From NCBI RefSeq assembly GCF_031769215.1, contig NW_026781960.1:62001-126000 (forward strand): a stretch of 64,000 nt of DNA. The letters are read 5' to 3'. Shown here in pieces: positions 4,356-64,000 of the stretch. Source of the DNA: Ylistrum balloti (Eukaryota). The translations under genes were made by a program, and so were the position numbers. Within the stretch, counting starts at the first letter, position 1. Each line of letters begins with the position of its first letter. Below the pieces are notes generated by a model. The model was not told where the DNA came from and did no database searches. It worked only from the letters and a program-made list of their open reading frames with translations.

Positions 4356-6703
4356 ATGATTTCAGTTGATTATATATGACACTGATTAGAGATATTGATA
4401 TGAAACAGGAAGACAAATCAGGCAATTCATGGAGGTGTGCTTTCTTTATTTGTATAAGAATACATCTTGTTCCGGCACTGAAAGGAGGTAAACCATAATT
4501 ATGTTATAATACAGAATAGATTCGTATGGTCTCAATATCGTTCTTTTTCTTTTCTAATAAGGTTCTGTGTTTGTATGTGTTTGTAAGATGAAAACACGCA
4601 CAATGTATGAGAAATGGCGTTCTGATCACGATGGAAATGTTTAACAGCAAACGGTCTTCGATTAAAAGAATGAAAGACATCAATGTATGTATTCGTTTTA
4701 AAGTAATCCAGCGACAAAAGATTTACACCGTTGACAGACCAACGGAAATGTGATGTTGTTTATTACTTTATCGAGGAATCTGACAAAGTAGCTACAAATG
4801 TCAACACATTATTTCTATAGAAAGGTGAGATATACGTCTACAAATTTCTTTATCTGGTGTTTTACCTGTGGTAGTAATACACATATTGACTTAGATTTAC
4901 AAACACAGTGTTGTACATTTTCATTTTAAGAAATTTGATTTACACTATACCTATTACGTACTTGTCCGAGATGGGTCGGGCTCGATTTACGGTGCGTGAA
5001 CGGAGATTCTCCGCTGAGATGAAGCGGTGGTGTGTGTCAATGACCGCAGGGCTGTACTGTTCACAATTATCTATTGCTAATTACAAATGTACCAGGTGAG
5101 ATTTTTTAACGCTCGTATCTTACTGACATTTATCTATATATATATAGTTTTTGAAATTCAAACATTCACATATTAAAATTGGTCGTGAGATTAAATATTT
5201 CCATGTATACTTAAAGGCAGAACCAGGTCTGAAATAGGATCCGGAATGGTTCCGGAAGGATAAGCGTTTTCAATGACGACAACCGCCATGAAGATCAGCA
5301 ACTCTAAACATTACACTCTTCCCTGGAATCATTTTTCACCGGACATTTAAATTCGGTGATCATATCTTAACAAAATAATTCAATTCATTATGACCAACAG
5401 ATAACAAAACTGGCGACAATATATATGATTTGGGTTTGACGTAAGGACACGCCATATATCGTGGATTTACTATATATTTTCTCCTTTTAATCTTCAATAA
5501 AAATAACTCTAAGACTGTTCCAGTATATCTTTTCCCGTTTTCCGGTAGTAAAATTAGAGATGTAAAAAATGTAGATCACTAGGGAAATTAATTTTAAAAA
5601 GACTTCGGTAAGACATCAATAATGATTAGTGATATTAGAAACCAGTAAACGGAAGTCAGGTCTTGTTAACCGATGGATAGCAGATGGTCATCGTACACTT
5701 GGAGAAATCACTTTAATATTACAGATAGTAGAACAAAGCAAATCTTTGAGAGGAACACTAATACCAAGACAGAAGTTATCGATATATCAACAACATTTTG
5801 ATTCAAACTGAACATCTATAAAACGAGGGCAAGATATGACCAAAAAATAGTTTACAAGGAGATAACAAGGAACGCAGGACCAGGTGTTTCGGAAGGGTAC
5901 AAACGTCTTCTGCTTCATCAAAGACACACGCCAAGTTTGCCACTAAACGCTTTTCTCGCTTTTCTCGGAAATATATTTACATGTATTCCCACTGAAGAGG
6001 GAGAAAATGACAAACACCAAACTTTCATATTACTACAAACTTTCTGATGATTTACCTGTTTAAAGATATCAGAAACCGAGAAGAATATAGGATATTGAAT
6101 TATATTTTGCTGTGAACCAGTTTCTGCGGCAGAAATAAAGAATAGAAGTAAACAGTGAGCTTATTACTATAATATAGCTTAGAGTCGAAACAATGTGACA
6201 CTGTTACTAATATTACTGAAATTTACGATAAAAAACTCGTTTGAAGTTGAGGAATATGCCTTACGTTTAACGTTCAATATCAAAGTGTTTTATCTGCAAT
6301 CATGGAAATCTGCAGAATAAAATCCAAGTTGTTAACAAACCAACTCTAAGTGAGTGCTACCAAGTGTTGGCTTTCATCTGAGACAAAACCCCATTCTCCA
6401 TCAGCGAATTATTCCAGACATCATCCTCATGTTATGCAGGTACAAAGAAAGTGTCATAAATAAGGCACCAATTTAACTGATACATACTTTAAAACCTGTT
6501 GAACCAGATATAAAACCACACAGTCATAAGGATGCTCCACCCTTACTAAAATCAGTCAGAAAAAAACAGATATTTCAAATGGTTTCCATAATTTTCCATT
6601 AAACACAAGTTATTGATTGTACAAAAGGCACACAAGTGAATAGCGCCTTTTAATACAAATTTAGGATTAGATACGAGAGGGACAAACAATGAATTAAACT
6701 GTT

Positions 6704-6745
6704 TCATACAGCTACTTTGTCCTTCTGGGACTCGTCAATGATGCC
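6704..6745 (-). ncRNA. Degenerate minimal hammerhead ribozyme (dispersed family copy)
   Basis: Minus strand reads GGCATCA-TTGACGA-GTCC-CAGAA-GGAC-AAAG-TAGCTG-TA-TGA. Stem II is intact; the core has C3>U and GAAA>AAAG. Confidence 0.7.
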
Positions 6746-6974
6746 AAGGGCCTAGATTGTGAAGCCCAAGTGGCGACTGAGCAAAAGATTGAGTAATCGA
6801 AATAAAGTCAAAATCTAGACGGGGAGGTGTACTATAATTAAATGAATTTCGTAATTCTAACATGTACCGTCGAACCCTATTATCTCGAAGTCGGAGAGAC
6901 CATGAGTTAAATGTGAAACTTTGCCGGGACCGATGAAATGCTTCGAATTAAATTATGTCTTCAAGTTATATGAG

Positions 6975-7095
6975 ATCGAGATAACGATGTCTGACTGTAG
7001 ATGATAATTCGAGATAACGATGTCTGACTGTAGATGATAATTCGAGATAACGATGTCTGACTGTAGATGATAATTCGAGATAACGATGTCTGACT
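6975..7095. repeat. 33-bp tandem repeat (~4 copies) inside a MITE-like insertion (~6860-7095)
   Basis: Unit CGAGATAACGATGTCTGACTGTAGATGATAATT. The insertion begins TACCGTCGAACCCTATTATCTCGAAG and interrupts homology between the 6.7-kb and 23.1-kb family copies. Confidence 0.75.
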
Positions 7096-8778
7096 GTAGA
7101 TGATAATTTTAGAAGAACGTCAAGTATATGGGTTCTGAACCCTGCCACAATTCGAATGAATTATCACGTGACATCCAAAGTTAACTACACAAATGTTATT
7201 GTAATGTTTTTATATATAGAGCTAGCCTGACAATTAATTCTACAAAACCCGAGTGTGAAAGCAGAATACTTTAGCAGATATTTACAACCATAAAAGCAGT
7301 AAGCATTGTTCAGTAAACAACATAATGGGAAAATTGAAAAATATTATTGAACACAATAGTAGAGTTGAACTTTGGGATAAAATATTGAATTATTTCAAAC
7401 GTTACATTTTGTATTATTATAACCACATCCAGAATTAATCGCAAAGTAGAGAAGTCTAGCCAAACCACCCGTTTGTAGGGGTAAGTGACAACAATTGAAT
7501 CGATCGTGTGGATCAGGCGAGACCCCTGATTACAATTTGAATACGTAATAAGTTTAGAAGTAGACATATTTCTGGGTGTTATTTGGTCGTAAATATACTT
7601 CTGTGGTAAATAAAGACGCGTTACGCCCAAAATGTACCACTTAACACTTGAGTTGATATCCTAAGGTAATTGTTGTCTCAGTTTGTGAATAAATACACTT
7701 TTAATTGTTGGAATATTGTTTAAGTCGTTTTTAAGAGAACTCTATTTTTCGCTATTCTCGAGGATGAAATGTTAGAGACATGAACCCTGCAAGACTTGGA
7801 ACATTCGAACAAGTATTCGTTAGAGATTGGAATTTGCTAATGACTCATCTCGTGTATTAACGTAGACAAAAATCTCACTCAAAATATAAGGGATTTACAG
7901 TAAGCAAACGTTAATTTATGAATTTCTAAGAAAACTTCTCCTAATCCATCTTGCGTCAAGTTTTTGGTGAAACCGAGAATTTCCAAATCATAAAAAAGCG
8001 GCGGGTTAAAATGAGGTTCCGGAAGGTCACGTGATGAACTCGGCTATCTCCGATCATAACAGCAAATGGGGGTAACACAACAGCGAGAGTCGACCAGTGT
8101 TAGTTTGAAGCTATTGATCTTTAACCATTTTTCTCAGATCGTGCTATTATTTTGCGGGTAATGTAATTTGAAGTATTACAACACCTGAAATCACGGAAAA
8201 GTAAGTCTAACCAAACAGTCACTTTAAGCTGATGTGAAAGGCTTATATCACTATCATTAAACCAAATAAGTAAAGGTTGAGAGTTCTAGGAGGTAATCAG
8301 TGTTTGCCGAATTCTATATTTTAACGTACATTATTTGCATGTATCAAAATAGTAATGAAGTATCAATTTTGAAGTAGTCTGCCGGAAGACCTGGTCTTAT
8401 TCTCCTTGTCCTTTCCCAGGAGTCTCCGTGTCTGTTTTTCTTTTGTTTATATATTTGCCCTATGATTATGATGACATGTTGGTATCCTTTTAGGGAAATT
8501 AACATGTCGGATTAAAACATTATGAACTTTGTGACTATTATATACCATTATCACAGTGATCTGAAGAGAATAAGATGTTTTACGAGACCTTTTTATTAGA
8601 TAATCTATATCAGCGGCGGTAAAGAGGGACACTTTCACTGACTGCGTTAACAAGACCTTTATTTTCCTATTGTAAAACCTAGGGAGATAATAATTGGGTT
8701 TGGGGTTTAAAAAAACTTGCTGTCAGTGGTATGTAAGTTATGTTAATTACAGGTTAGTTTCTCTTAATCGTCTGATGA

Positions 8779-14872: not shown

Positions 14873-15176
14873 GATCATTATTAAGATAAAAAGACACGTG
14901 AGTCAATACGTGTAAATATCTAACTTTATCAGGCATACTGAATCTAATAAGTAATTTGTATTGACAGGAGTACAATGGTGGTGGATTCTAGTCCACGAGA
15001 TTTGTCGTAACTTACAATCCGTGTTTTAATTCATTTGTATTGCGACACGCTTCACAATATACATATGTACAAGAAGATATTTCGCTTATTAAAACGATGA
15101 AATTTGATTGATATGTGGGTGCTAACATCTCCAATTATGTTTTGACATTGATTTCGACTTATTTCAAACCAATGTT

Positions 15177-15845
15177 GCAACGCTATTACCTAGAATAACG
15201 AAACAGCTGTAGATGTAACATCACTGACGAGTCCCAGAAGGACGAAACAGCTGTATGATGTAGCATCAGTGACAAGTCCTAGAAGGACGAAACAGCTGTA
15301 TGATGTAGCATCACTGACGAGTCCTAGAAGGACGACACAGCTGTATGATGTAGCATCACTGACGAGTTCTAGAAGGATGAAACAGCTGTATGATGTAACA
15401 TCACTGACGAGTCCTAGAAGGATGGAAAAGCTGTATGATGTAACATCACTGACGAGCCCTAGGAGGATGAAACAGCTGTATGATGTAGCATCACTGACAA
15501 GTCCTAGAAGGATGAAACAGCTGTATGATGTCACATCACTGACAAGTCCTAGAAGGATGGAACAGCTGTATGATGTAGCATCACTGACGAGTCCTAGAAG
15601 GACGAAACAGCTGTATGATGTAGCATCACTGACGAGTCCAAGAAGGACGAAACAGCTGTATGATGTCACATCACTGACAAGTCCTAGAAGGATGGAACAG
15701 CTGTATGATGTAGCATCACTGACGAGTCCTAGAAGGACGAAACAGCTGTATGATGTAGCATCACTGACGAGTCCAAGAAGGACGAAACAGCTGTATGATG
15801 TAGCATCACTGACGAGTCCTAGAAGGATGAAACAGTTGTTTGATG
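15177..15845 (+). ncRNA. Tandem array of minimal hammerhead ribozymes, 45-bp unit, 14 recognisable copies plus one decayed lead copy
   Basis: Unit: CATCA-CTGACGA-GTCC-TAGAA-GGAC-GAAA-CAGCTG-TA-TGATG-TAG. It has the conserved core CUGANGA...GAAA...UH, stem I CAUCA/UGAUG, stem II GUCC/GGAC and palindromic stem III ACAGCUGU. Copies with core and stems intact start near 15219, 15579, 15624, 15714 and 15759. Confidence 0.88.
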
Positions 15846-18800
15846 ATGTTAATTTCATTTCTTGGCTATATGGCATCAAATTCTGAATTTGTATTGAAAG
15901 GCGCTATTCTCGTTCTAAAAATTTACAAACTAATAAGACAGAACATTCATTATATGGAATTCTTTGATGTATAAAATATCTTATTAAAATAGTTCAATAC
16001 GTGTGTGATATTCTAAAACATGTTGCCATCACAATATTGATATATTTCAAACTTGTTACGTTATTCAGGCTGTTGGTATCAAAATGAGAACCGATAAGGA
16101 AGAATGATACTTGACTTGGGAAAAAGGAGACCATGGCCCTAAAAGCGATAGTATCTTTATAAGGAAAAGACAACGTCAAAAACGTAATCATGTTCTGTAA
16201 ACACAAACATACAATTTTCAAGATGGCGTTTGATTTCTGTATGTATAATAAATAATATATTCTTTTATTGTACCTTGGATAAAGATATTACCTGCTTAGA
16301 TGTACCCACCAATATTAAGTCGGAATCCCTTAAACTTAACAGTAATCGGTAGACTTACAGAAAACAAGGAGGGGAAGTGTGTTGTGTAAATGCTGGCACT
16401 ACGTAACTATAAACCTACGTCTTTAATCTGATGATACAATTGCTGGTTAAATAAATAGTCGATACTACAGGCTACTCCTTGGCTGTATTGTACGACAGGT
16501 TGCGTCTTATGAAGGGCGTTGACGTGTGTCAGTGAAAAGGTCTTCAGAACTGGCCTACTTGTTACACATCTCCCACCCTACCCGTCTATTGTGATACGGT
16601 CCGGATGACACACCAGGTAGCTACCTATTACAGAATGTAGACTAGACACACGATATAAAAAGGTGATCATTCGTTGTTACACATGTTTACTCAGCATGGG
16701 ATCGCCTTTTTATTGCACAGCTTTATTTTAATGTATTGATATTTTTTCGTCCCGTGTTATATTATTCTAGTTTTCAAATGTGTTATTGTCTTGCGATCGA
16801 CGCATTTATACGTAAGCTCTAGTTTTGCATCAAATTCATCAATTAAAGCATCTTTGGATTGTGATTGTGTAGACATGTTATTTTAGTCTTGTTGTTTTAT
16901 AACATTTGTAAATCTTGTTGTTTCTTGTTTAGTATTTTATTATCATGAATAGAGTGTGTAAGGGAAAATGATAGAAGTGTATGGTTGTCTGAAATTACGA
17001 AATAATTCAGTTTAAGGGACATTATTTTCTGTAATATAGTTTACATTATATACATATCTGCACAAACATCACCCAGAAAAGTGCATAAAAAAGTTAAACT
17101 TATGAAACAAAAGAAATACAATGAATGCTTTCTGAATATACCTCCATGAATCCCTGGTAACCACATTACACTAGGGCTGTATAATGTTTTTATCATTCCA
17201 TAATCTCTTTATTCGTGTTTCAAACTTGATTAATGTAATTTCAGTATTACAGTATTTTTCTATTAACATAACGTTTTGAGTCCGTTACGAAAACTTAAAC
17301 AAGAAATTGATACAATCTATAGATAAAATTTGGCTGATAAAATGCACGTGATGCTTTCTGGATCATCAACTCTATCGATAGATCTATCACTGATATCAAC
17401 AATAATGACGTAAAATAGCCCTTGTTCACAGTAGCAATCATTGGTTTCTCTGAGTATTGCTCAGTATTCAGCTCATGCTATAAATATTCTTTAATATGGT
17501 TTAGTCGTTGTTAGTATAGTAATCTTTAGCTATCATAGTCTATAAAAATAAAAATATACTGTACTTTGGGACATATGGCTGTTTCTTACAATTGTATAAT
17601 TAGTATTAGGTATCTTTGGATACCTGAAAAAGTGAATAGAACTTTGTGTATCCGAACGACAGCGGCCCTCTCCATTTAAATATGACTTACCGTATATATA
17701 AATTTCGGCGTTGTTAACCGTATTTTTATTACCAATATACTGTCGAACAAGTCAGCGAAGTATCTACTTGCCTATGGTTTTCTGCTGTACAATTCTACAG
17801 ATACCTGACTAGATTTTGGAATGTTAATGCGACCATAGGATTGTCGTGTCTAAGGAGCATTACCATAAAGATGTAGATTTGTAAAGTTGGACACCTCTAT
17901 TCATCGTGGCTAACAAAACCCGACATACATTTGATCAGTAATATATCACGCCCTGTCTATAGCTCCTATTATTTAAAGGTCACTAAAATGCGCGGGGACC
18001 TGGTGGGAACGCATATGTCCTTAACACAATGGCGAGAGATAAACCATTATTTAATAGTACATTGTACACAGCAAAGAATACCGAAAATTCGAAATGTCCA
18101 ATAAGTATTTGAATACATTTTAAACAGATTCCAAACAGATTGACAATAAAAAAAAAAAAACAAACAAACAAATATATTGCAAATGTGCAGAATTTATGGG
18201 CTTACCGAAGATTGTCTTTCCTGAACGACATGCATGTCGAAGTCAAATGACGAAAGAAATCTAAGATCGTACAGAAGACACACAGAAGTAAACAGCACCT
18301 TTAATACAAACTTATTACAATAGAGCCAATCGATAAACTGCATCGTAAAATAGATTTAGCTATACACTGAATGGAAAATGTAGATGATTTGAAAGGAAAA
18401 CTGAATTTTTCTCAATATATATCCTTATTTTGTATCATTATGATATCAAATTATGGAATATCGACCTCATAACAACATTAAAATGTCGGTATGAATGAAG
18501 TGACAAGACATAATTGTTTGAAATACTGATACTTGTGTCCCATCTAATATCGAATTCATGGCTAATATGATATCTTTTTATAGAATTTACTACTAGCTTT
18601 ATATTGTAATATGTGTATCCCTGGTTACTATGTTGTTATTTCCCTAGTTCTCGCCTTGAGAACAGGACATGTACACCATGGTTGTCGTTCATAGAGACAA
18701 ACTTCCGGTTTGTTTTAATATCATTTAACATCGTCAGATATCTAAGACTATCGATGTCAAAACTGATATATTTTTATATTACATACTGATTTTTTTAACC

Positions 18801-22475: not shown

Positions 22476-23130
22476 GGTTTATAAATATATATACATCATG
22501 TTTCATGTCATAATTGGATAATATTGAAGACACGTTTTAAAATAATTATTACTATTTCACAATTTTACAGCTTTCGTTGCAATGTATCCATCCCATTAGT
22601 TTAGGATGTCTGAGGATAGCCTTGTCTAATGAGGGTACATGCGCGTATGTACATATCTTAATTTGTCAATGTACAACAACGTCAAGCTGGCAAACGTAGT
22701 TTGGGTATAACCCGTTGGTATAAATAAACGTGAAGCGATATATCAAATACACGGGAAAAGGTACACCTAAAATTTTAACATTATAAGCATTGAAACAGAC
22801 AAAGGGTGTATTCAGATATTTTCTCATAGTTTTGTAGAATTTGAAATTGTTAGGATATAGCACATATAAAAGGTTTTTTTGTGTAATTTTGTGTTTGCAC
22901 TTTTGTTTTTTTTCTCTGTTTTTCTGTTTATTTATTTTCCCAGGCTCTGTAAATTTGTATGAAAATTGCAGTTAAATAAAAAAAAAATGTAAATACATCT
23001 ATAATAATTCTGCTTCTCTAAAACCGATATAGATTTGTTAACTGAACATTATGTATATTGAAGATTATACAAAAGACACCTTTTCATAATTTTGAGCTAG
23101 ATACGGTATAGCCAAACCAATGCCTTAAAT

Positions 23131-23176
23131 TGCATCGTACAGCTGTTTCGTCCTTCTAGGACTCGTCAGTGATGCA
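23131..23176 (-). ncRNA. Solo minimal type I hammerhead ribozyme, core intact
   Basis: Minus strand: TGCATCA-CTGACGA-GTCC-TAGAA-GGAC-GAAA-CAGCTG-TA-CGATGCA. Core and stem II are identical to the array consensus; stem I has 6 bp plus an A-C mismatch next to the core. Confidence 0.85.
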
Positions 23177-25200
23177 AAGAACCTAAATTTTGAAGTCTAA
23201 GAGGCTACTGAGGAAACTCCAAAGTGATCGGAAGAAAAGTCGAATGAAGACGGTAAGTTTCAGCAGCCCCATATATCAGACAATTCAGTTTAGAACAGCG
23301 TCAACTATATTCTGAACCGTAACACAATTCGAACGAATTAAAACGAGGCATGCAGGTTACGGCAAACTTTGGGGACTTAAAATCAACACGTGAATAGCAC
23401 ATTTGAATAATTTAGTGTTAGATACAATAAGAACCAAATAATTGTCATTCAAAGGGAAGTAACTCCTAAAATGTTTTGGTAATACTTTAACAAGATAGTG
23501 TGATTTCGGTTACACTTTAAAAGGTACAATACAATACTATAATACCGATAGAAGATCGGGAAACAAGTCTGAAGTTTATATATATTTTTTTCTTATGGAT
23601 ATTACGAACTATACGCGATAAACATCGATAAGATGGTTAGGACATGCACAGTGAATAAGATTTCTCTCGATCATAAATACAAAACTATGTAGACACACAA
23701 TTAAAAAACACAAGATGTAAAAGATAGCCTGGTGACAAAAAAAAATCAGAGTTATATCCATCGTGTTTAACAAAGAAATGTTTATTTTGCCATTTATAAG
23801 GTGCGTTTTAAGTATCAAACTGAACTTTCTTCAGTAATGAAAGATAGATTATTACAGAATTGAAACGACGGAGATGAAAGTATTCCTGGTGTAGATTCGT
23901 AAGTGTGTCACAAAGTTTAACATATATATTGTAAAAAAAACTGACAAAAACGATATGAAAGTTGCGGACAAAGCCATTCTATATAGTACGAATCTAGCAT
24001 TAAGAGGCGATATGAATGACAGATCTGGATACAAATATTATATTTCACGTTTTATTATACAAAGTCAAAATTTCAAACTTCAAATCTTTTATTATGTAGC
24101 AGGGTTAAAATTTGTAAAAATACCAACCGTTGAACACACTGTTGAGAGTTATTGTATTTACTCTGAAGACATAAATGGATTTCCCCTCAGCAGTTAAACA
24201 ACAGCACAATATCAACAATTATAATGAACTGCATTCAAATGTCGCACTTATACAGCACACTATTTGGGTATAAATTGTACAACTAGTCACGTTAGATTGA
24301 AATGAGAATTTTTAACATTTTATATTTACATTAAACCGACTCTATACATATACATTCGTGTACGTTATATTCAACATGTACATGTAAATCTATAGTTTTA
24401 ATATATATGGATACTAGAGAATACAATATATATAGTTTCTGAATAAAAATTAGTTTTTAAATAAGATGGAAACGTGATAGTAATCATACCTATTTAAGGA
24501 ACAGGGGACATTTAGTGGGGAGCGCACCTTGCTATTATCGATGATTTTTTTGTGTTTAAATGATAAATATAATCTCATAAAATTAACATTAAAACAATAT
24601 AGCGTAACCGGTTCATATACAAATTACGAAACAACAAATATGATATGAAAATATCAAAGGAAGTAAATGTAGGATTTAGATAAAATATTTAGTTCGTTAA
24701 TTTCTGACCTGCCGTAATGAGAGTCTGTTACGTGTAATTGTGGAATGCTGAATACTACGCCAAGTTTAGAAAGTACACTATCAAATTGGGAAAGAATTCC
24801 GACGGACAATATCTCAACTGAGGAGCAGCAAGATAATAGGCCCTTTATGGTATATTTCGTTGTATTGAGAGATTAAAACCCGCTAATCTAGCTGTTACTC
24901 TACCGTGAACGAGTGCGGAAGTCGAGATTATATTGAAAACCCGGTGAACACATATATGGGCGACGGGAACAAAGCGATGACACGTACACATATACAGGTG
25001 TAATGCGGTCACAGGTGTGTGTGTTACAGTTCTGCAAAGATGGCGGTAAACAGGAAGTGGATAGAAAAACGATAAACAGAAAGTAGCCAGTATATTTGGC
25101 CCGTGTGTGTATGTTTACACAAATACCGGGACGGGATAGCATTCCGTAGTCTCACAAGAGCTCTACAGGAGAACATGGAGTCATACATGTACCCACAACA

Positions 25201-31369: not shown

Positions 31370-31768
31370 AAACAAAGACATTTCAAATTAATCCGATAAT
31401 TTTATGAAAACTTCCATTTTTGGCGAATCCTTTTCCAAAAATTTATTTACATCCAATTCAGTTTTACTGGATGGTCTTTGATTAATGTTTCACTGATGCA
31501 TGGTTGTTATTGTCATGAGGTATTTCTATGTGTTTTATGGTCAATATTTATTGGGTGATTCAGATACATTTCATGGTCAGTGTTCATCGAGTGTTTAAGA
31601 GATATAATGGAAATTAGAATGTTTTCTGTAGGGTAGATATTTAGTAATGTTTGGTACAATGATATCTGTATTATATATTCCAGACAACAGTAAAACATTT
31701 TAACATTGTAAAGCAAACATCCTGATGATACAATAAAATATTCTACGGTAAAAATTAATTATTATTTC

Positions 31769-34700
31769 ATAGGGCGGTCTTGTGGTTAAAGATAGAGGGA
31801 TATTCTATAGGGCGGTCTTGTGGTTAAAGATAGAGGGATATTTCATAGGGCGGTCTTGTGGTTAAAGATAGAGGGATATTTTATAGGGCGGTCTTGTGGT
31901 AAAAGATATAGGGATATTTTATAGGGCGGTCTTGTGGTTAAAGATAGAGGGATATTCTATAGGGCGGTCTTGTGGTTAAAGATAGAGGGATATTCTATAG
32001 GGCGGTCTTGGGGTTAAAGATAGAGGGATATTCTATAGGGCGGTCTTGGGGTTAAAGATAGCGTGATATTTTATAGGGCGGTCTTGTGGTTAAAGATAGC
32101 GTGATATTTTATAGGGCGGTCTTGTGGTTAAAGATAGAGGGATATTCTATAGGGCGGTCTTGGGGTTAAAGATAGCGTGATATTTTATAGGGCGGTCTTG
32201 GGGTTAAAGATAGCGTGATATTTTATAGGGCGGTCTTGTGGTTAAAGATAGAGGGATATTTTATAGAGCGGTCTTGGGGTTAAAGATAGAGGGATATTCT
32301 ATAGGGCGGTCTTGGGGTTAAAGATAGCGTGATATTTTATAGGGCGGTCTTGTGGTTAAAGATAGAGGGATATTCTATAGGGCGGTCTTGTGGTTAAAGA
32401 TAGAGGGATATTCTATAGGGCGGTCTTGGGGTTAAAGATAGCGTGATATTTTATAGGGCGGTCTTGTGGTTAAAGATAGAGGGATATTTTATAGGGCGGT
32501 CTTGTGGTTAAAGATAGCGTGATATTTTATAGGGCGGTCTTGTGGTTAAAGATAGAGGGATATTTTATAGGGCGGTCTTGTGGTTAAAGATAGAGGGATA
32601 TTTTATAGGGCGGTCTTGTGGTTAAAGATAGCGTGATATTTTATAGGGCGGTCTTTTGTGGTTAAAGATAGCGTGATATTTTATAGGGCGGTCTTGTGGT
32701 TAAAGATAGAGGGATATTTTATAGGGCGGTCTTGGGGTTAAAGATAGCGTGATATTTTATAGGGCGGTCTTGTGGTTAAAGATAGAGGGATATTTTATAG
32801 GGCGGTCTTGGGGTTAAAGATAGCGTGATATTTTATAGGGCGGTCTTGTGGTAAAAGATAGAGGGATATTTCATAGGGTGGTCTTGTGGTTAAAGATAGA
32901 GTGATATTTCATAGGGCGGTCTTGTGGTTAAAGATAGAGTGATATTTTATAGGGCGGTCTTGTGGTTAAAGATAGAGTGATATTTTATAGGGCGGTCTTG
33001 TGGTTAAAGATAGAGTGATATTTTATAGGGCGGTCTTGTGGTTAAAGATAGAGTGATATTTTATAGGGCGGTCTTGTGGTTAAAGATAGAGTGATATTTT
33101 ATAGGGCGGTCTTGTGGTTAAAGATAGAGTGATATTTTATAGGGCGGTCTTGTGGTTAAAGATAGAGTGATATTTTATAGGGCGGTCTTGTGGTTAAAGG
33201 TAGAGTGATATTTTATAGGGCGGTCTTGTGGTTAAAGATAGAGGGATATTTTATAGGGCGGTCTTGTGGTTAAAGATAGAGTGATATTTTATAGGGCGGT
33301 CTTGTGGTTAAAGATAGAGTGATATTTTATAGGGCGGTCTTGTGGTTAAAGATAGAGTGATATTTTATAGGGCGGTCTTGTGGTTAAAGATAGAGTGATA
33401 TTTTATAGGGCGGTCTTGTGGTTAAAGATAGAGTGATATTTTATAGGGCGGTCTTGTGGTTAAAGATAGAGTGATATTTTATAGGGCGGTCTTGTGGTTA
33501 AAGATAGAGTGATATTTTATAGGGCGGTCTTGTGGTTAAAGATAGAGGGATATTCTATAGGGCGGTCTTGGGGTTAAAGATAGAGGGATATTTCATAGGG
33601 CGGTCTTGTGGTAAAAGATATAGGGATATTTTATAGGGCGGTCTTGTGGTTAAAGATAGAGTGATATTCCATATGGCGGTCTTGGGGTTAAAGATAGAGG
33701 GATATTTTATAGGGCGGTCTTGTGGTTAAAGATAGAGGGATATTTTATAGGGCGGTCTTGGGGTTAAAGATAGAGGGATATTTTATAGGGCGGTCTTTTT
33801 GTTAAAGATAGAGGGATATTTTATAGGGCGGTCTTGGGGTTAAAGATAGAGGGATATTTTATAGGGCGGTCTTGGGGTTAAAGATAGAGGGATATTTTAT
33901 AGGGCGGTCTTGTGGTAAAAGATAGAGGGATATTTCATAGGGCGGTCTTGGGGTTAAAGATAGAGGGATATTTCATAGGGCGGTCTTGTGGTTAAAGATA
34001 GAGGGATATTTTATAGGGCGGTCTTGTGGTTAAATATATAGGGATATTTTATAGGGCGGTCTTGGGGTTAAAGATAGAGTGGTATTCTATAGGGCGGTCT
34101 TGTGGTTAAAGATAGAGTGATATTTTATAGGGCGGTCTTGTGGTTAAAGATAGAGTGATATTTTATAGGGCGGTCTTGTGGTTAAAGATAGAGTGATATT
34201 CTATAGGGCGGTCTTGTGGTTAAAGATAGAGGGATATTTTATAGGGCGGTCTTGGGGTTAAAGATAGAGGGATATTTTATAGGGCGGTCTTGTGGTTAAA
34301 GATAGAGGGATATTTTATAGGGCGGTCTTGGGGTTAAAGATAGAGGGATATTTTATAGGGCGGTCTTGGGGTTAAAGATAGAGGGATATTTTATAGGGCG
34401 GTCTTGTGGTAAAAGATAGAGGGATATTTCATAGGGCGGTCTTGGGGTTAAAGATAGAGGGATATTTCATAGGGCGGTCTTGTGGTTAAAGATAGAGGGA
34501 TATTTTATAGGGCGGTCTTGTGGTTAAATATATAGGGATATTTTATAGGGCGGTCTTGGGGTTAAAGATAGAGTGGTATTCTATAGGGCGGTCTTGTGGT
34601 TAAAGATAGAGTGATATTTTATAGGGCGGTCTTGTGGTTAAAGATAGAGTGATATTTTATAGGGCGGTCTTGTGGTTAAAGATAGAGTGATATTTTATAG

Positions 34701-34965
34701 GGCGGTCTTGTGGTAAAAGATAGAGTGATATTCTATAGGGCGGTCTTGTGGTTAAAGATAGAGGGATATTTCATAGGGCGGTCTTGTGGTTAAAGATAGA
34801 GGGATATTTTATAGGGCGGTCTTGTGGTTAAAGATAGAGGGATATTTTATAGGGCGGTCTTGGGATTAAAGATAGAGGGATATTTCATAAGGCGGTCTTG
34901 GGGTTAAAAATAGAGTGATATTTCATAAGGCGGTCTTGGGGTTAAAGATAGAGGGATATTCTATA
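31769..34965. repeat. Minisatellite, 38-bp unit, ~84 copies
   Basis: Unit ATAGGGCGGTCTTGTGGTTAAAGATAGAGKGATATTTT. Confidence 0.96.
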
Positions 34966-35614
34966 ACCTGTTGTAATTGGAAGAAAAACATTAAATCTAT
35001 TAAGGGGTGGATGACTCCTAATCTAGAATTTAATTTTCCTTTAGATCCTGTGTATATAGTTTTCTCATTCCCTCCTAGGTTTTAAATTGTAGGCCCTTGA
35101 TGCAGTCTCTTACTCAAAATTTGTTTTGAAAGTTGCTATACACTTGTGTATATTTTGCACTTTCTTTAATTTATTCCAGTTCAGATGAATGACTACTACC
35201 TCTTTCCAATAAATGTGGTGATTCGCTCCAATGTTCCCTGTGTCACCAGCACTAGAACAACCCATGTTGTGATCGCTGATATCATTGAAATACTGTTATG
35301 TTGTATAGAATACCATCCATTGAAAAATCATCTTCACCATGAATATGTTCTTAAAAGAAAAAAAAACATATTTCTTGTACATTCATCCATCGACATGCTT
35401 TCCCTGGTATTAGTCTATCTATAGATTTAAAGTCATCAACTTTTGCCTGTATATATTGACAGTCCCTTTCTTGCCTCATATTAAAAAATTGTAACCATTA
35501 AACACTCCATATTTGTGACAGACTTCTCATTCTTGGAAGAGTTATGTCCCCATACACAGAGGTTTGGTGTTTGATGTAGGCGTTCAATTTCTTGTTTTTG
35601 TCTGGAAATGTATA

Positions 35615-60769: not shown

Positions 60770-63615
60770 CGAACCGTCGGCCAGGAGCACGTTATAGTAG
60801 TGATAATCGACTTCGGATTTACCGTCGGTCGGGACAACGTTATAGTGATAGTCGGTCAGGAGTACGATAAAGTGATAGTCGTGTTCGGATTTACCGTCGG
60901 CCAGGAGTACGATAAAGTGATAGTCGTGTTCGGATTTACCGTCGGCCAGGAGTACGTTATAGTGATAGTCGTGTTCGGATTTACCGTCGGCCGGTAGAAC
61001 GATATAGTGATAGTCGATTTCGGATTTACCGTCGGCCGGGAGAACTATATAGTGATAGTCGAGTTCGGATTTACTGTAACGTTCTCCTGGCCGACGGTAC
61101 ACCCGAACACGACCATGACTGTAACGTTTTCCCGATCGACGTTACACTCGAACACGATAGTCACTGTAACGTTCTCCTGGCCGACGGTACACCCGAACAC
61201 GACCGTGACTGTAACGTTATCCCTACCGACGGTACACCCGAACACGATATTCACTGTAACGTTCTCCTGCCGACGATACACCCGAACACGATATTCACTG
61301 TAACTTTCTCCTGCCGACGATACACCCGAACACGACCATGACTGAAACGTTCTCCGGCCGACGGTATACACGGGTGTACCGTCGATCAGGGGAACGTTAC
61401 AGTGAGGATCGTATTCGGGTGTTACGTCGGAAGTGTGAACGTTACAGTGACGGTCGTGTTCGGGTTTACAGACGGACTGGTGAACGTTACAGTGACGGTC
61501 GTGTTCGGTTGTACCGTCGGCCGGGAGAACGTTACAGTAACGGTCGTGTTGGGGTGTAACGTCGATCGGGAGAACTTTACAGTGAGGATCGTGTTCGGGT
61601 GTTACGTCGGTATTGTGAACGTTACAGTGACGGTCGTGTTCGGGTTTACAGACGGACTGGTGAACGTTACAGTGACGGTCGTGTTCGGTTGTACCGTCGA
61701 TTGGGAGAACGTTACAGTGACGGTCGTGTTAGGATGTATCGTCGGCCGGAAGAACGTCACTGTGAAGATGTTGTTCGGGTGTATCGTCGGCCATGACAAC
61801 GTTACAGTGACGGTCGTGTTCGGATGTAACGTCGGCCGGGAGAACGTTACAGTGAAGATGGTGTTCGGATGTAACGTCGGCCAGGACAACGTCACTGTGA
61901 AGATGTTGTTCGGGTGTATCGTCGGCCTTGACAACGTTACAGTGACGGTCGTGTTTTGTTGTACCAACGGCCGAGAGAACGTTACAATGACGGTCGTGTT
62001 CGTGTGTACCGTCGGTCGGGAGAACGTTACAGTAACGGTCGTGTTCGGGTGTATCGGCGGCCGGGAGAACGTTACAGTGACGGTCGTGTTCGGGTGTACC
62101 GTCGGCCGGGAGAACGTTACAATGACGGTCGTGTTCGTGTGTACAGACGGTCGGGAGAACGTTACAGTGACGGTCGTGTTCGGGTGTACCGTCGGTCGGG
62201 AGAACGTTACAGTGACGGTCGTGTTCGGGTGTATCGTCGGCCGGGAGAACGTTACAGTGACGGTCGTGTTCGGGTGTATCGTCGGCCATGACAACGTTAC
62301 AATGACGATGGTGTTCGGGTGTACCGTCGGCCATGACAACGTTACAATGACGATGGTGTTCGGGTGTATCGTCGGCCGAGAGAACGTTACAGTGACGATC
62401 GAGTTCGGGTGTATCGTCGGAAGTGTGAACGTTACAGTGACGGTCGTGTTCGGGTTTACAGACGGACTGGTGAACGTTACAGTGACGGTCGTGTTCGGTT
62501 GTACCGTCGGCCGGGAGAACGTTACAGTAACGGTCGTGTTGGGGTGTAACGTCGATCGGGAGAACTTTACAGTGAGGATCGTGTTCGGGTGTTACGTCGG
62601 TATTGTGAACGTTACAGTGACGGTCGTGTTCGGGTTTACAGACGGACTGGTGAACGTTACAGTGACGGTCGTGTTCGGTTGTACCGTCGATTGGGAGAAC
62701 GTTACAGTGACGGTCGTGTTAGGATGTATCGTCGGCCGGAAGAACGTCACTGTGAAGATGTTGTTCGGGTGTATCGTCGGCCATGACAACGTTACAGTGA
62801 CGGTCGTGTTCGGATGTAACGTCGGCCGGAAGAACGTTACAGTGAAGATGGTGTTCGGGTGCATCGTCGGCCATGACAACGTTACAGTGACGGTCGTGTT
62901 CGGATGTAACGTCGGCCAGGACAACGTCACTGTGAAGATGTTGTTCGGGTGTATCGTCGGCCTTGACAACGTTACAGTGACGGTCGTGTTTTGTTGTACC
63001 AACGGCCGGGAGAACGTTACAATGACGGTCGTGTTCGTGTGTACCGTCGGTCGGGAGAACGTTACAGTAACGGTCGTGTTCGGGTGTATCGGCGGCCGGA
63101 AGAACGTTACAGTGACGGTCGTGTTCGGGTGTACCGTCGGCCGGGAGAACGTTACAATGACGGTCGTGTTCGTGTGTACAGACGGTCGGGAGAACGTTAC
63201 AGTGACGGTCGTGTTCGGGTGTACCGTCGGTCGGGAGAACGTTACAGTGACGGTCGTGTTCGGGTGTATCGTCGGCCGGGAGAACGTTACAGTGACGGTC
63301 GTGTTCGGGTGTATCGTCGGCCATGACAACGTTACAATGACGATGGTGTTCGGGTGTACCGTCGGCCATGACAACGTTACAATGACGATGGTGTTCGGGT
63401 GTATCGTCGGCCGAGAGAACGTTACAGTGACGATCGTGTTCGGGTGTATCGTCGGCCGGGAAAACGTTACAGTGACGGTCGTGTTCGGGTGTATCGTCGG
63501 CCATGACAACGTTGCAATGACGATGGTGTTCGGGTATACCATCGGCCATGACAACGTCACAGTGACGATGGTGTTCGGGTGTACCGTCGACCGGATGATC
63601 GTTACAGTGACGTTT
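60770..63615. repeat. GC-rich minisatellite, 45-bp unit, ~60 copies, with internal inversion (61073-61370) and ~990-bp higher-order duplication
   Basis: Unit GTTACAGTGACGGTCGTGTTCGGGTGTACCGTCGGCCGGGAGAAC. The variant series starting ~61420 recurs at ~62410. Explains all ORFs from 60683 to 63621. Confidence 0.95.
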
Positions 63616-64000
63616 GTGTAATTTAGATCCTTCATATCAGTCCGACGGAGGGAGAATAATATTTGGTGTTGCGTGGCAACGCATCGAAGAACCCCTGCCG
63701 GTATATTGAAAAGCTCCTTGATCGGTTTGAAGAAATTTATCGTCATTACGTTGTTGCAGTTATCTATTATAGCTAGTGTAACATTTCTAGGCAGGACTAT
63801 TTCAGGCATGTGATAGAACATTGCCAAAGAATTTCTGTGTAATTTGATAAATTCTGTACGTAGTATATCTATGGCATGCAACAACGTGAAACGGGTATGT
63901 ATTCCTCTTTCCTTGGCTTTAAATTTCCATTTCGATTTAGAAAATACAATGTCTTACAATATAAGCTGTATTTTGGAGAGGATGAAGAAAGACAAAAGAG

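What the first reader, a model, noticed from the sequence alone, without database searches (positions are those of the whole stretch)
15177..15845. A minisatellite made of nothing but hammerhead ribozymes (45-nt unit = one minimal hammerhead)
Each unit reads stem I 5' arm CAUCA, core CUGACGA, stem II GUCC-UAGAA-GGAC, GAAA, CAGCUG, UA (GUA cleavage triplet), stem I 3' arm UGAUG, with only ~3 nt left over. Five of 14 copies have a perfect core and stems. Established knowledge: minimal type I hammerheads with a palindromic stem III occur in Penelope-like retroelements, amphibian satellite 2 and metazoan non-LTR retrozymes, usually with monomers well over 100 nt that cleave as dimers. A ribozyme-only 45-nt monomer array is far more compact. 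Inference: a transcript would be cut into 45-nt multiples that could circularise. It would be an ultra-minimal retrozyme-like unit, or a self-destruct cassette for read-through RNA. Novelty could not be checked against databases.
Basis: partly seen in the sequence, partly recalled or inferred. Interest (0 to 1): 0.9.

Follow-up and report, generated by a model that had tools for sequence, protein, structure and literature searches.

The report
Hammerhead-ribozyme minisatellite inside a mobile element
This 657-base stretch really is about 14 back-to-back copies of a 45-base self-cutting RNA motif. It is the ribozyme module of a common ~400-base mobile element, multiplied as ordinary repeat DNA and now decaying, and nothing here shows it is a tiny self-propagating RNA.

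Summary
Observation confirmed. Window 15189-15845 holds 14.6 copies of a 45-bp unit, and every unit is a hammerhead ribozyme (HHR) motif. One unit passes Rfam's type I threshold. A unit plus 6 nt of its neighbour forms a complete type III hammerhead scoring 48.4 bits (threshold 48.5), and that fold is the predicted minimum-energy structure. Five units are perfect, and 6 of 14 junction-spanning ribozymes look competent.

The "ultra-minimal retrozyme" reading is not supported.
- The array sits between the decayed arms of a ~392-400-bp dispersed, retrozyme-like element. Its ground state is one canonical type I HHR about 88 nt from the 3' end: about 25 of 29 copies picked by their arm have at most one unit.
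- Growth was at the DNA level. Here a 135-bp three-unit block that includes a dead unit is duplicated at 134/135 identity.
- Across 927 units, core bases are no better conserved than the rest. The weakest positions are CpG sites at G8 and C11.1/G12, there is no excess of compensatory pairs, and dead variants are amplified.
- No RNA run on record holds the stretch.

One thing remains unexplained. Units are about 95% identical to the family consensus, while the flanking arms are about 65-83% identical. That implies exchange between arrays or re-seeding.

The scan has already reported this satellite several times on other pieces of this genome. I found no published 45-nt ribozyme-only repeat.

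The parts
14955..15188 (+). Decayed 5' arm of the host element. Consensus arm is 269 bp and ends ...TTTAGGCCCTTA just before the ribozyme.
   Evidence: BLAST of the element consensus: arm positions 18-117 match 14972-15070 at 79%. The rest is too decayed to align. Start and end are extrapolated from that match.
15173..15217 (+). Degenerate first unit at the 5' edge of the array. Only the ...CCTAGAA.AACGAAACAGCTGTAGATGTA part is recognisable.
   Evidence: Register listing. The junction test shows 0/7 helix III pairs.
15189..15845 (+). 45-bp tandem array, 14.6 copies. Each unit is one hammerhead motif. The sense strand is +.
   Evidence: TRF; Rfam type I and type III matches, all on +.
15218..15261 (+). 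The unit that passes Rfam's curated threshold as a type I hammerhead.
   Evidence: RF00163, 37.8 bits against a gathering score of 34.
15563..15613 (+). Best junction-spanning type III-like hammerhead: 7-bp helix III between two neighbouring CAGCUG, 5-bp helix I closed by UAG, 4-bp helix II. Predicted cut after A15570.
   Evidence: RF00008, 48.4 bits against a gathering score of 48.5. The MFE fold is the three-way junction: -15.8 kcal/mol, z -2.86. An identical one lies at 15698-15748.
15533..15802 (+). Two copies of a 135-bp (three-unit) higher-order block. The first unit of each copy is catalytically dead (G8A, C11.1U, A13G).
   Evidence: 15533-15667 against 15668-15802: 134 of 135 identical, compared with 91% at lag 45.
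15846..15934 (+). Decayed 3' arm of the host element. Consensus is 88 bp: CAGTTTAATTCATTG...TTTTGTACAATCTT.
   Evidence: Arm positions 3-63 match 15848-15909 at 77%. The end is extrapolated.

Best explanation
The array is a DNA-level expansion of the single hammerhead module of an abundant, non-coding, retrozyme-like mobile element.

The host element:
- Its monomer is about 392-400 bp: a 269-bp 5' arm, one canonical type I HHR with a palindromic loop 3, and an 88-bp 3' arm.
- Copies often carry a 5'-truncated extra piece of the 3' arm upstream.
- It occurs at least once as a head-to-tail dimer.

How the array formed (inferred): in a minority of copies, a 45-bp segment was duplicated. It runs from the last two bases of the 5' arm (TA) to ...GTATGATG. 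It was then amplified by slippage and unequal exchange. The hairpin- and palindrome-rich unit probably favours this.

A by-product of the tandem layout: each minimal type I motif, which alone needs a partner, becomes a self-sufficient type III-like hammerhead with its neighbour.

Selection: the arrays themselves are not kept by selection for cleavage. They accumulate CpG transitions at G8 and C11.1/G12, structure-blind indels, and locally amplified dead variants.

Shown here: anatomy, host element, copy numbers, mutation pattern, block duplication. Inferred: the slippage mechanism, retrozyme-type mobility of the host element, and that transcripts, if made, would be cut.
For: Host element:
- Both flanks are conserved across about 30 array loci, and the junctions are in the same register.
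- Of 29 loci picked by the 5' arm alone, about 25 have at most one HHR unit (some decayed or partly deleted) between the arms. Only 3 have 2, 8 or 11 units.
- The element consensus carries an intact HHR and a terminal direct redundancy.
- A partial upstream 3' arm of variable length is seen in L027, L033 and L046.
- Two 5'-arm hits lie 392 bp apart on C137, with the 3' junction in place.
- There are at least 1,488-1,636 first-look candidates for the arm and 1,851 HHR-to-3'-arm junctions, against 16,311 unit-to-unit junctions.

DNA-level growth and drift:
- A 135-bp block including a dead unit is duplicated at 134/135 in this array. Eleven of 34 substitutions here are CpG transitions at the two CpG sites.
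- In 927 units, the least conserved positions after the loop-1 base are G8 (81%), C11.1 (85.5%), G12 (86.5%) and A13 (90%). Outside CpG sites, core positions average 0.955 identity and non-core positions 0.958.
- The core is intact in 40.8% of units, against 43.7% expected if positions mutate independently. Double changes in stems do not exceed expectation.
- Whole arrays are dead: 0 of 51 and 0 of 20 units intact. Dead haplotypes such as G12C+A13G are amplified to 39 units.
- Indel variants are internal deletions and micro-duplications that ignore the fold.

Fold: type III score and MFE structure.
Against: Array units are much closer to the family consensus than their arms. Units are about 95% identical, and each array's majority unit differs from the global unit at 0.8 positions on average. 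Arms are about 65-83% identical, and they have no close relatives genome-wide. Pure in-situ neutral growth cannot give this, so some exchange between arrays, re-seeding or selection must be added.

Related species carry HHR arrays with a different linker. The module has therefore become tandem more than once, which could hint at an advantage.

No autonomous partner was found, so retrozyme or PLE-type mobility of the host element is inferred from structure only.

Expression and cleavage are untested.
Confidence: 0.68

Rival explanations
1. Ultra-minimal retrozyme. Array transcripts cut themselves into 45-nt units or short multimers. These are ligated into circles, copied by a resident reverse transcriptase by rolling circle, and the multimeric cDNA is put back, preferentially by homology at existing HHR sites. 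Arrays would thus be continually re-seeded with active, consensus-like units.
For: - Neighbouring units form a complete hammerhead.
- The perfect consensus unit is the commonest haplotype: 112 of 927 units, present in 25 of 30 loci.
- Arrays are much younger than their arms yet carry the family consensus.
- Identity rises slightly in the 10-20 nt of arm next to the array.
- Retrozyme circles copied by rolling circle are the published model for the 170-400-nt relatives (PMC7229834).
Against: - Dead units and multi-unit blocks containing them are amplified, which a cleavage-dependent cycle would not do.
- There is no constraint on core or pairings.
- All 30 arrays sit in the same register between at least one recognisable arm. 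None is free-standing.
- No RNA run holds the stretch.
- A 45-nt circle that is almost all helix is a poor template.
Confidence: 0.1
2. Ordinary satellite kept uniform by concerted evolution between loci (ectopic gene conversion, unequal exchange, extrachromosomal circles). The ribozyme content would be an irrelevant passenger. This is a refinement of the best explanation that accounts for the young-array, old-arm contrast.
For: - About 16,000 units on very many contigs provide many donors.
- Array consensus equals family consensus in 17 of 30 arrays.
- Edge units are more decayed than interior ones: 92-93% against 95-96%. This is the classic signature of exchange limited to array interiors.
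Against: Unit haplotypes with two or more changes are almost all private to one locus, so recent exchange is not visible in this sample. The sample is 30 loci, biased towards arrays most like the query.
Confidence: 0.15
3. A host-selected RNA device. Arrays act as self-cutting cassettes that terminate or destroy read-through or intronic transcripts, or that yield small RNAs.
For: Six competent ribozymes in a row would cut any + strand transcript crossing 15345-15795. The HHR repeat is kept in several related species.
Against: - Hundreds of arrays vary widely in their intact fraction (0-95%) and lie on both strands.
- The mutation pattern looks neutral.
- No ORF of 90 aa or more, other than those running through tandem repeats, lies within 9-24 kb.
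- No expression data exist.
Confidence: 0.04
4. The carrier is a Helitron/Helentron-type non-autonomous element of the kind known in bivalves to carry central tandem repeats, and the HHR resemblance is secondary.
For: Arm - tandem repeat - arm is the layout of bivalve elements that carry satellite-like repeats (own knowledge, not tested here). The window is crowded with other short-period arrays.
Against: - The ground state has one unit, not a repeat.
- That unit is a full canonical hammerhead conserved across species while the arms differ.
- Copies have a variable 5'-truncated direct redundancy and a head-to-tail dimer, which are features of PLE and retrozyme insertions (PMC8557442).
- I saw no 3' hairpin in the consensus.
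Confidence: 0.03

Closest known systems
Metazoan non-LTR retrozymes (Cervera & de la Pena 2020, PMC7229834) and amphibian satellite 2
   Same: Canonical type I hammerhead with a 4-bp helix II, a 6-bp helix I in the single-copy form, and a short helix III capped by a palindromic loop. Non-coding, AT-rich, head-to-tail repeats. The ribozyme needs a neighbour to form a stable helix III. The ~392-400-bp host element here fits this size class (170-400 nt).
   Different: The repeated unit in the array is the 45-nt ribozyme alone, not a 170-400-nt monomer with a structured non-ribozyme body. The array lies inside one monomer. There is no evidence of circles, and there is evidence of DNA-level growth.
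Minimal hammerheads of Penelope-like elements (Cervera & de la Pena 2014, PMC4209133)
   Same: Short palindromic helix III, action expected as dimers, location near the 3' end of a retroelement, and partial-tandem insertions with a short terminal extension (PMC8557442).
   Different: Here helix II is 4 bp (PLE minimal motifs: 6-8 bp with a bulged base). No RT/GIY-YIG ORF is attached. Two PLE loci of this genome share no sequence with the element.
Double-hammerhead of avocado sunblotch viroid and newt transcripts (Forster et al. 1988, as cited in PMC4209133)
   Same: Two copies pair through their helix III strands to make an active fold.
   Different: There the copies are hundreds of nt apart on a dimeric RNA. 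Here adjacent 45-nt units do it, helix I closes as a 3-nt-loop hairpin, and the result is topologically a plain type III hammerhead.
Satellites born from parts of mobile elements
   Same: A tandem duplication inside a dispersed element, then expansion by unequal exchange, higher-order blocks and decayed edge units. The 2026 preprint 10.64898/2026.07.22.740005 discusses this route for retrozyme satellites.
   Different: The amplified part is exactly a catalytic RNA motif.

Membership tests
Hammerhead ribozyme (Rfam clan CL00010: RF00163 type I, RF00008 type III) | Score at or above the curated gathering score | tested here: met
   RF00163 scores 37.8 bits against 34 at 15218-15261. The type III reading scores 48.4 against 48.5, just below threshold, at 15563-15613 and 15698-15748.
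Hammerhead ribozyme (Rfam clan CL00010: RF00163 type I, RF00008 type III) | Conserved core C3 U4 G5 A6 N7 G8 A9, G12 A13 A14, an A15.1-U16.1 pair, and H17 not G | tested here: met
   The consensus unit has all of them. Eight of 14 units here and 378 of 927 genome-wide are intact.
Hammerhead ribozyme (Rfam clan CL00010: RF00163 type I, RF00008 type III) | Three helices around the core, supported by covariation | tested here: inconclusive
   The helices are present and form the MFE fold. Within this family there is no excess of compensatory changes, because the units are too alike and are drifting.
Hammerhead ribozyme (Rfam clan CL00010: RF00163 type I, RF00008 type III) | Self-cleavage 3' of H17 | not testable with these tools
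   Needs in vitro transcription. No raw RNA reads were available.
Non-LTR retrozyme (applied to the 45-bp array itself) | Tandem monomers of about 170-400 bp, each with one type I HHR plus a non-ribozyme body | tested here: not met
   The monomer is 45 bp, all ribozyme. The array is nested between the arms of a larger element.
Non-LTR retrozyme (applied to the 45-bp array itself) | Expressed as self-cleaved linear and circular RNA | not testable with these tools
   No RNA run on record holds the stretch. The runs that were laid are contigs only.
Non-LTR retrozyme (applied to the ~400-bp host element) | Non-coding monomer of 170-400 bp with one canonical type I HHR, found head-to-tail | tested here: inconclusive
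   Consensus is about 400 bp with one intact HHR. It has a terminal direct redundancy. One dimer is inferred from coordinates 392 bp apart. Most sampled copies are single. Long multimers were not seen.
Penelope-like element pLTR hammerhead | Linked to an RT plus GIY-YIG ORF, or sharing sequence with such an element | tested here: not met
   No such ORF lies near the array. Fifty-one GIY-YIG matches exist in the genome. The two loci fetched share nothing with the element and show no HHR. Other PLE families were not examined.
Minisatellite / satellite DNA | Head-to-tail units at many loci, with higher-order blocks and decayed edges | tested here: met
tRNA-derived SINE (host element) | tRNA-like head | tested here: not met
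   ARAGORN finds nothing in 8 loci. Rfam gives no hits other than hammerhead in 20 loci.

The most novel reading that the evidence does not exclude
The arrays are not just dead DNA. They are renewed through RNA: array transcripts cut themselves into 45-nt units or short multimers, and cDNA of the active units is copied back into old element copies by homology. That would make this the smallest retrozyme-like replicator known, and would explain why arrays stay at the family consensus inside arms that have decayed by 20-35%.
Probability: 0.1. Interest if true: 0.85.

Novelty: new variant of a known kind. Interest (0 to 1): 0.42.

Why it matters
It shows a catalytic RNA motif turning into a satellite. 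About 16,000 spacer-free hammerhead units lie in one genome, and a related array with a different linker is present in sister species.

The tandem layout turns a partner-dependent type I motif into a self-sufficient type III-like ribozyme by duplication alone. This is a simple route between hammerhead topologies.

It also provides a natural mutant series for a quick bench test: intact and G8A/A13G units sit side by side.

The mismatch between young arrays and old flanks bears on how dispersed satellites stay uniform.

For genome annotation, these arrays should be labelled as expansions of a retrozyme-like element. They should not each be counted as a ribozyme gene.

Tried and rejected
- Autonomous partner. 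I searched for GIY-YIG domains and fetched two PLE-like loci. They show no hammerhead by Rfam and share no sequence with the element. I did not try to obtain those letters another way.
- tRNA-like or other RNA head in the host element: none found.
- Expression. The look-up of sequencing runs listed no RNA holder. The four runs laid are contigs, so they show presence only and give no RNA ends.
- Variant arrays with 53-bp and 42-bp periods, seen by hit spacing, were not read.
- Assembly duplicates. I considered whether array loci with equal layouts (L001/L040, L027/L041) were duplicates. Their flanks differ, so they are separate loci.
- A first fuzzy-regex script timed out.
- Literature. Searches for hammerhead with oyster, Crassostrea, satellite DNA, Helentron, scallop or minisatellite found no description of a ribozyme-only repeat. 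The library lacks most subscription journals.

Full report
**What is there**

TRF reports one array at 15189-15845 with period 45, 14.6 copies, 91% matches and no indels.

Rfam's type I hammerhead model passes its curated threshold on the unit at 15218-15261: 37.8 bits against 34, E 6e-06 for the whole 64-kb window, both strands. A permissive local scan finds the other units on the + strand only.

Five units have a perfect core and perfect stems: those starting at 15218, 15578, 15623, 15713 and 15758. Eight have an intact core.

**The tandem layout changes the topology**

In a lone unit, helix III is only A15.1-U16.1 plus one C-G pair around the palindrome AGCU. This is the partner-dependent form described for metazoan type I hammerheads (PMC4209133).

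In the array three things happen. The CAGCUG of unit n pairs with the CAGCUG of unit n+1, giving 7 bp with A15.1-U16.1. The 3' arm of helix I of unit n and the 5' arm of unit n+1 close into a hairpin (UGAUG-UAG-CAUCA). The core and helix II come from unit n+1.

Rfam scores these 51-nt stretches as type III hammerheads at 48.4 bits, 0.1 below the gathering score. The three-way junction is the predicted minimum-energy fold: -15.8 kcal/mol, z -2.86, and 0 of 200 shuffles fold as well.

Of the 14 junction-spanning ribozymes in this array, six have an intact core and intact stems. Their predicted cuts fall after 15345, 15570, 15615, 15705, 15750 and 15795. Cleavage itself is inferred, not shown.

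**It is a genome-wide satellite**

The same array is found on dozens of contigs of the 648-Mb assembly, with lengths from 0.6 kb to over 10 kb. The unit-to-unit junction (20 nt, at most 1 mismatch) occurs at 16,311 places. The reversed control pattern occurs zero times. Earlier notes of this scan describe the same satellite on at least six other pieces of this genome.

**The array sits inside a mobile element whose normal state is one ribozyme**

Flanks of about 30 array loci align with each other. About 230-300 bp upstream ends in ...TTTAGGCCCTTA. About 88 bp downstream begins CAGTTTAATTCATTG and ends ...GTGTCTTTTGTACAATCTT (alignment A1).

I then searched the genome with a 5' arm alone. This gave at least 1,488 first-look candidates. 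In 29 of the loci returned, about 25 have at most one hammerhead unit between the two arms, in several of them decayed or partly deleted. Only three have 2, 8 or 11 units.

The consensus of the single-unit copies is a ~400-bp element with an intact canonical type I hammerhead. Its helix I is 6 bp (GCAUCA/UGAUGC) and its helix II 4 bp.

Copies begin with a variable, 5'-truncated repeat of the element's own 3' end. In L027 this includes part of a hammerhead. On contig C137, two 5'-arm matches lie 392 bp apart with the 3' junction in place, which indicates a head-to-tail dimer.

These features match what is described for Penelope-like elements and non-LTR retrozymes (PMC8557442, PMC7229834, preprint 10.64898/2026.07.22.740005). 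There is no tRNA-like head. I found no autonomous partner.

In the window, decayed arms flank the array. Arm5 positions 18-117 match 14972-15070 at 79%, and arm3 positions 3-63 match 15848-15909 at 77%. At least eight further decayed copies of the element lie elsewhere in the 64 kb.

**How the array grew**

The array begins right after the 5' arm and ends ...GTATGATG|CAGTTT. The duplicated segment therefore runs from the TA that ends the 5' arm to GATG. This is a plain tandem duplication whose breakpoints are unrelated to the cleavage site.

Within this array, the three-unit block 15533-15667 recurs at 15668-15802 with 134 of 135 bases identical, against 91% identity at lag 45. The block carries a dead unit (G8A, C11.1U, A13G). 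Eleven of the 34 substitutions here are transitions at the unit's two CpG sites.

Across 927 units from 30 loci:
- The least conserved positions after one loop-1 base are G8 (81%), C11.1 (85.5%), G12 (86.5%) and A13 (90%).
- Outside CpG sites, core and non-core positions are equally conserved (0.955 and 0.958).
- The core is intact in 40.8% of units, against 43.7% expected if positions mutate independently.
- Stem positions show no excess of compensatory double changes.

Some arrays have no intact unit at all (0 of 51, 0 of 20). Others are nearly all intact (26 of 29). Dead haplotypes are amplified locally: G12C+A13G reaches 39 units, and G5A+C10.4A+loop-2 G-to-A reaches 19 units. Length variants are internal deletions and micro-duplications that ignore the fold.

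All of this indicates amplification and drift as DNA, indifferent to catalysis.

**What does not fit**

The units are much closer to the family consensus than the arms beside them.
- Units: mean identity is 95.2%. Each array's majority unit differs from the global unit at 0.8 of 45 positions on average, and at 0 positions in 17 of 30 arrays.
- Arms: the aligned parts are about 80-83% identical to the consensus. By global alignment, the 5' arm is 57-73% identical over most of its length (80% in the last 9 nt beside the array) and the 3' arm is 67-82%.

The contrast also holds for arrays found through their arm rather than their units. L074 has arms at 84-86% and four of eight units perfect.

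The arms are truly old. Genome-wide, the best non-self matches of two arms are 78% and 84%.

Neutral in-situ growth from the resident unit predicts several fixed differences per array. Something must therefore keep or reset the units. The candidates are exchange among the about 16,000 units (concerted evolution), re-seeding from RNA or cDNA, or selection on the unit.
- For DNA-level exchange: edge units are more decayed (92-93%) than interior ones.
- Against recent exchange: multi-change haplotypes are nearly all private to one locus.

I leave this unresolved. The sample is biased towards arrays most similar to the query, and I could not fetch more sequence.

**Other species**

No RNA run on record holds the stretch. 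Contigs of four runs were laid on 15000-16000.
- Organism B covers the flanks as well, so it is the same or a very close species.
- Organisms C, D and E cover only the repeat, at very high word depth.
- In D and E the units are joined ...GAUGU-CCCUAA-CAUCA..., giving a 49-nt unit with 4-nt gaps in the laid pieces. That junction is absent from this genome.

CCCTAA resembles the end of the 5' arm (GGCCCTTA|G). This suggests a separate duplication with other breakpoints. The evidence is consensus loose ends with 0.6-0.76 agreement, so it is suggestive only.

**Comparison with the literature**

Described animal hammerhead repeats have monomers of about 170-400 nt with a non-ribozyme body. They are expressed as circles (PMC7229834; its supplement names a 174-nt rotifer example). 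PLE hammerheads are minimal, act as dimers and cleave poorly in vitro (PMC4209133).

I found no description of a repeat whose unit is the ribozyme alone, within a library that lacks most subscription journals.

**Verdict**

The retrozyme-in-miniature and self-destruct readings lack support.

The most likely account is DNA-level expansion of the ribozyme module of a retrozyme-like element, kept uniform by an unidentified exchange process. This is a new variant of a known kind and of moderate interest. This scan has already reported it several times on other DNA of the same genome.

Noticed in passing
G000 contigs C4:355516-356428 and C16:259330-259559 (outside the window): Arrays with the same unit-to-unit junction but other periods: hits spaced 53 bp on C4 and 42 bp on C16. 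Whether the extra or missing bases respect the hammerhead fold is unknown.
   Followed up: no
window 23077-23442 (-): Another copy of the host element with one decayed hammerhead unit. A partial 3' arm lies directly upstream of its 5' arm, which is the terminal redundancy typical of the family.
   Followed up: partly
window 6615-7177 (-), including the 33-bp x 4 perfect repeat at 6976-7108: A host-element copy with a single unit. Its 5' arm is interrupted by about 245 bp that include a 100%-identical 33-bp tandem repeat. A different part of the same element family has therefore acquired a young repeat.
   Followed up: no
window 31763-35166 (+): The 38-bp, 84-copy array (31763-34965) ends 50 bp before a fragment of the host element: arm5 187-268 at 35015-35098 and arm3 28-88 at 35105-35166, with the ribozyme deleted. 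Whether that array is tied to the element was not examined.
   Followed up: no
window 61371-63619: A second 45-bp satellite (50 copies, 83% matches) with an inverted 45-bp array beside it at 61073-61366. It has no hammerhead match and is unrelated to the finding.
   Followed up: no
L081 (G000:C422:248500-254500): Penelope-like ORF of 751 aa with a C-terminal GIY-YIG domain, repeated head-to-tail about every 5.36 kb on C422. Rfam finds no hammerhead at E up to 0.1, and there is no similarity to the host element.
   Followed up: partly
Runs X8 and X12 (organisms D and E), laid on window 15216-15756: Related species carry the same hammerhead as a repeat with a 7-nt loop-1 linker (UCCCUAA), giving about 49 nt per unit. 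This form is absent from this genome.
   Followed up: partly
G000:C137:808025-808639: Two 5'-arm matches 392 bp apart, followed by the HHR-to-3'-arm junction. This is a head-to-tail dimer of the host element, inferred from coordinates only.
   Followed up: partly
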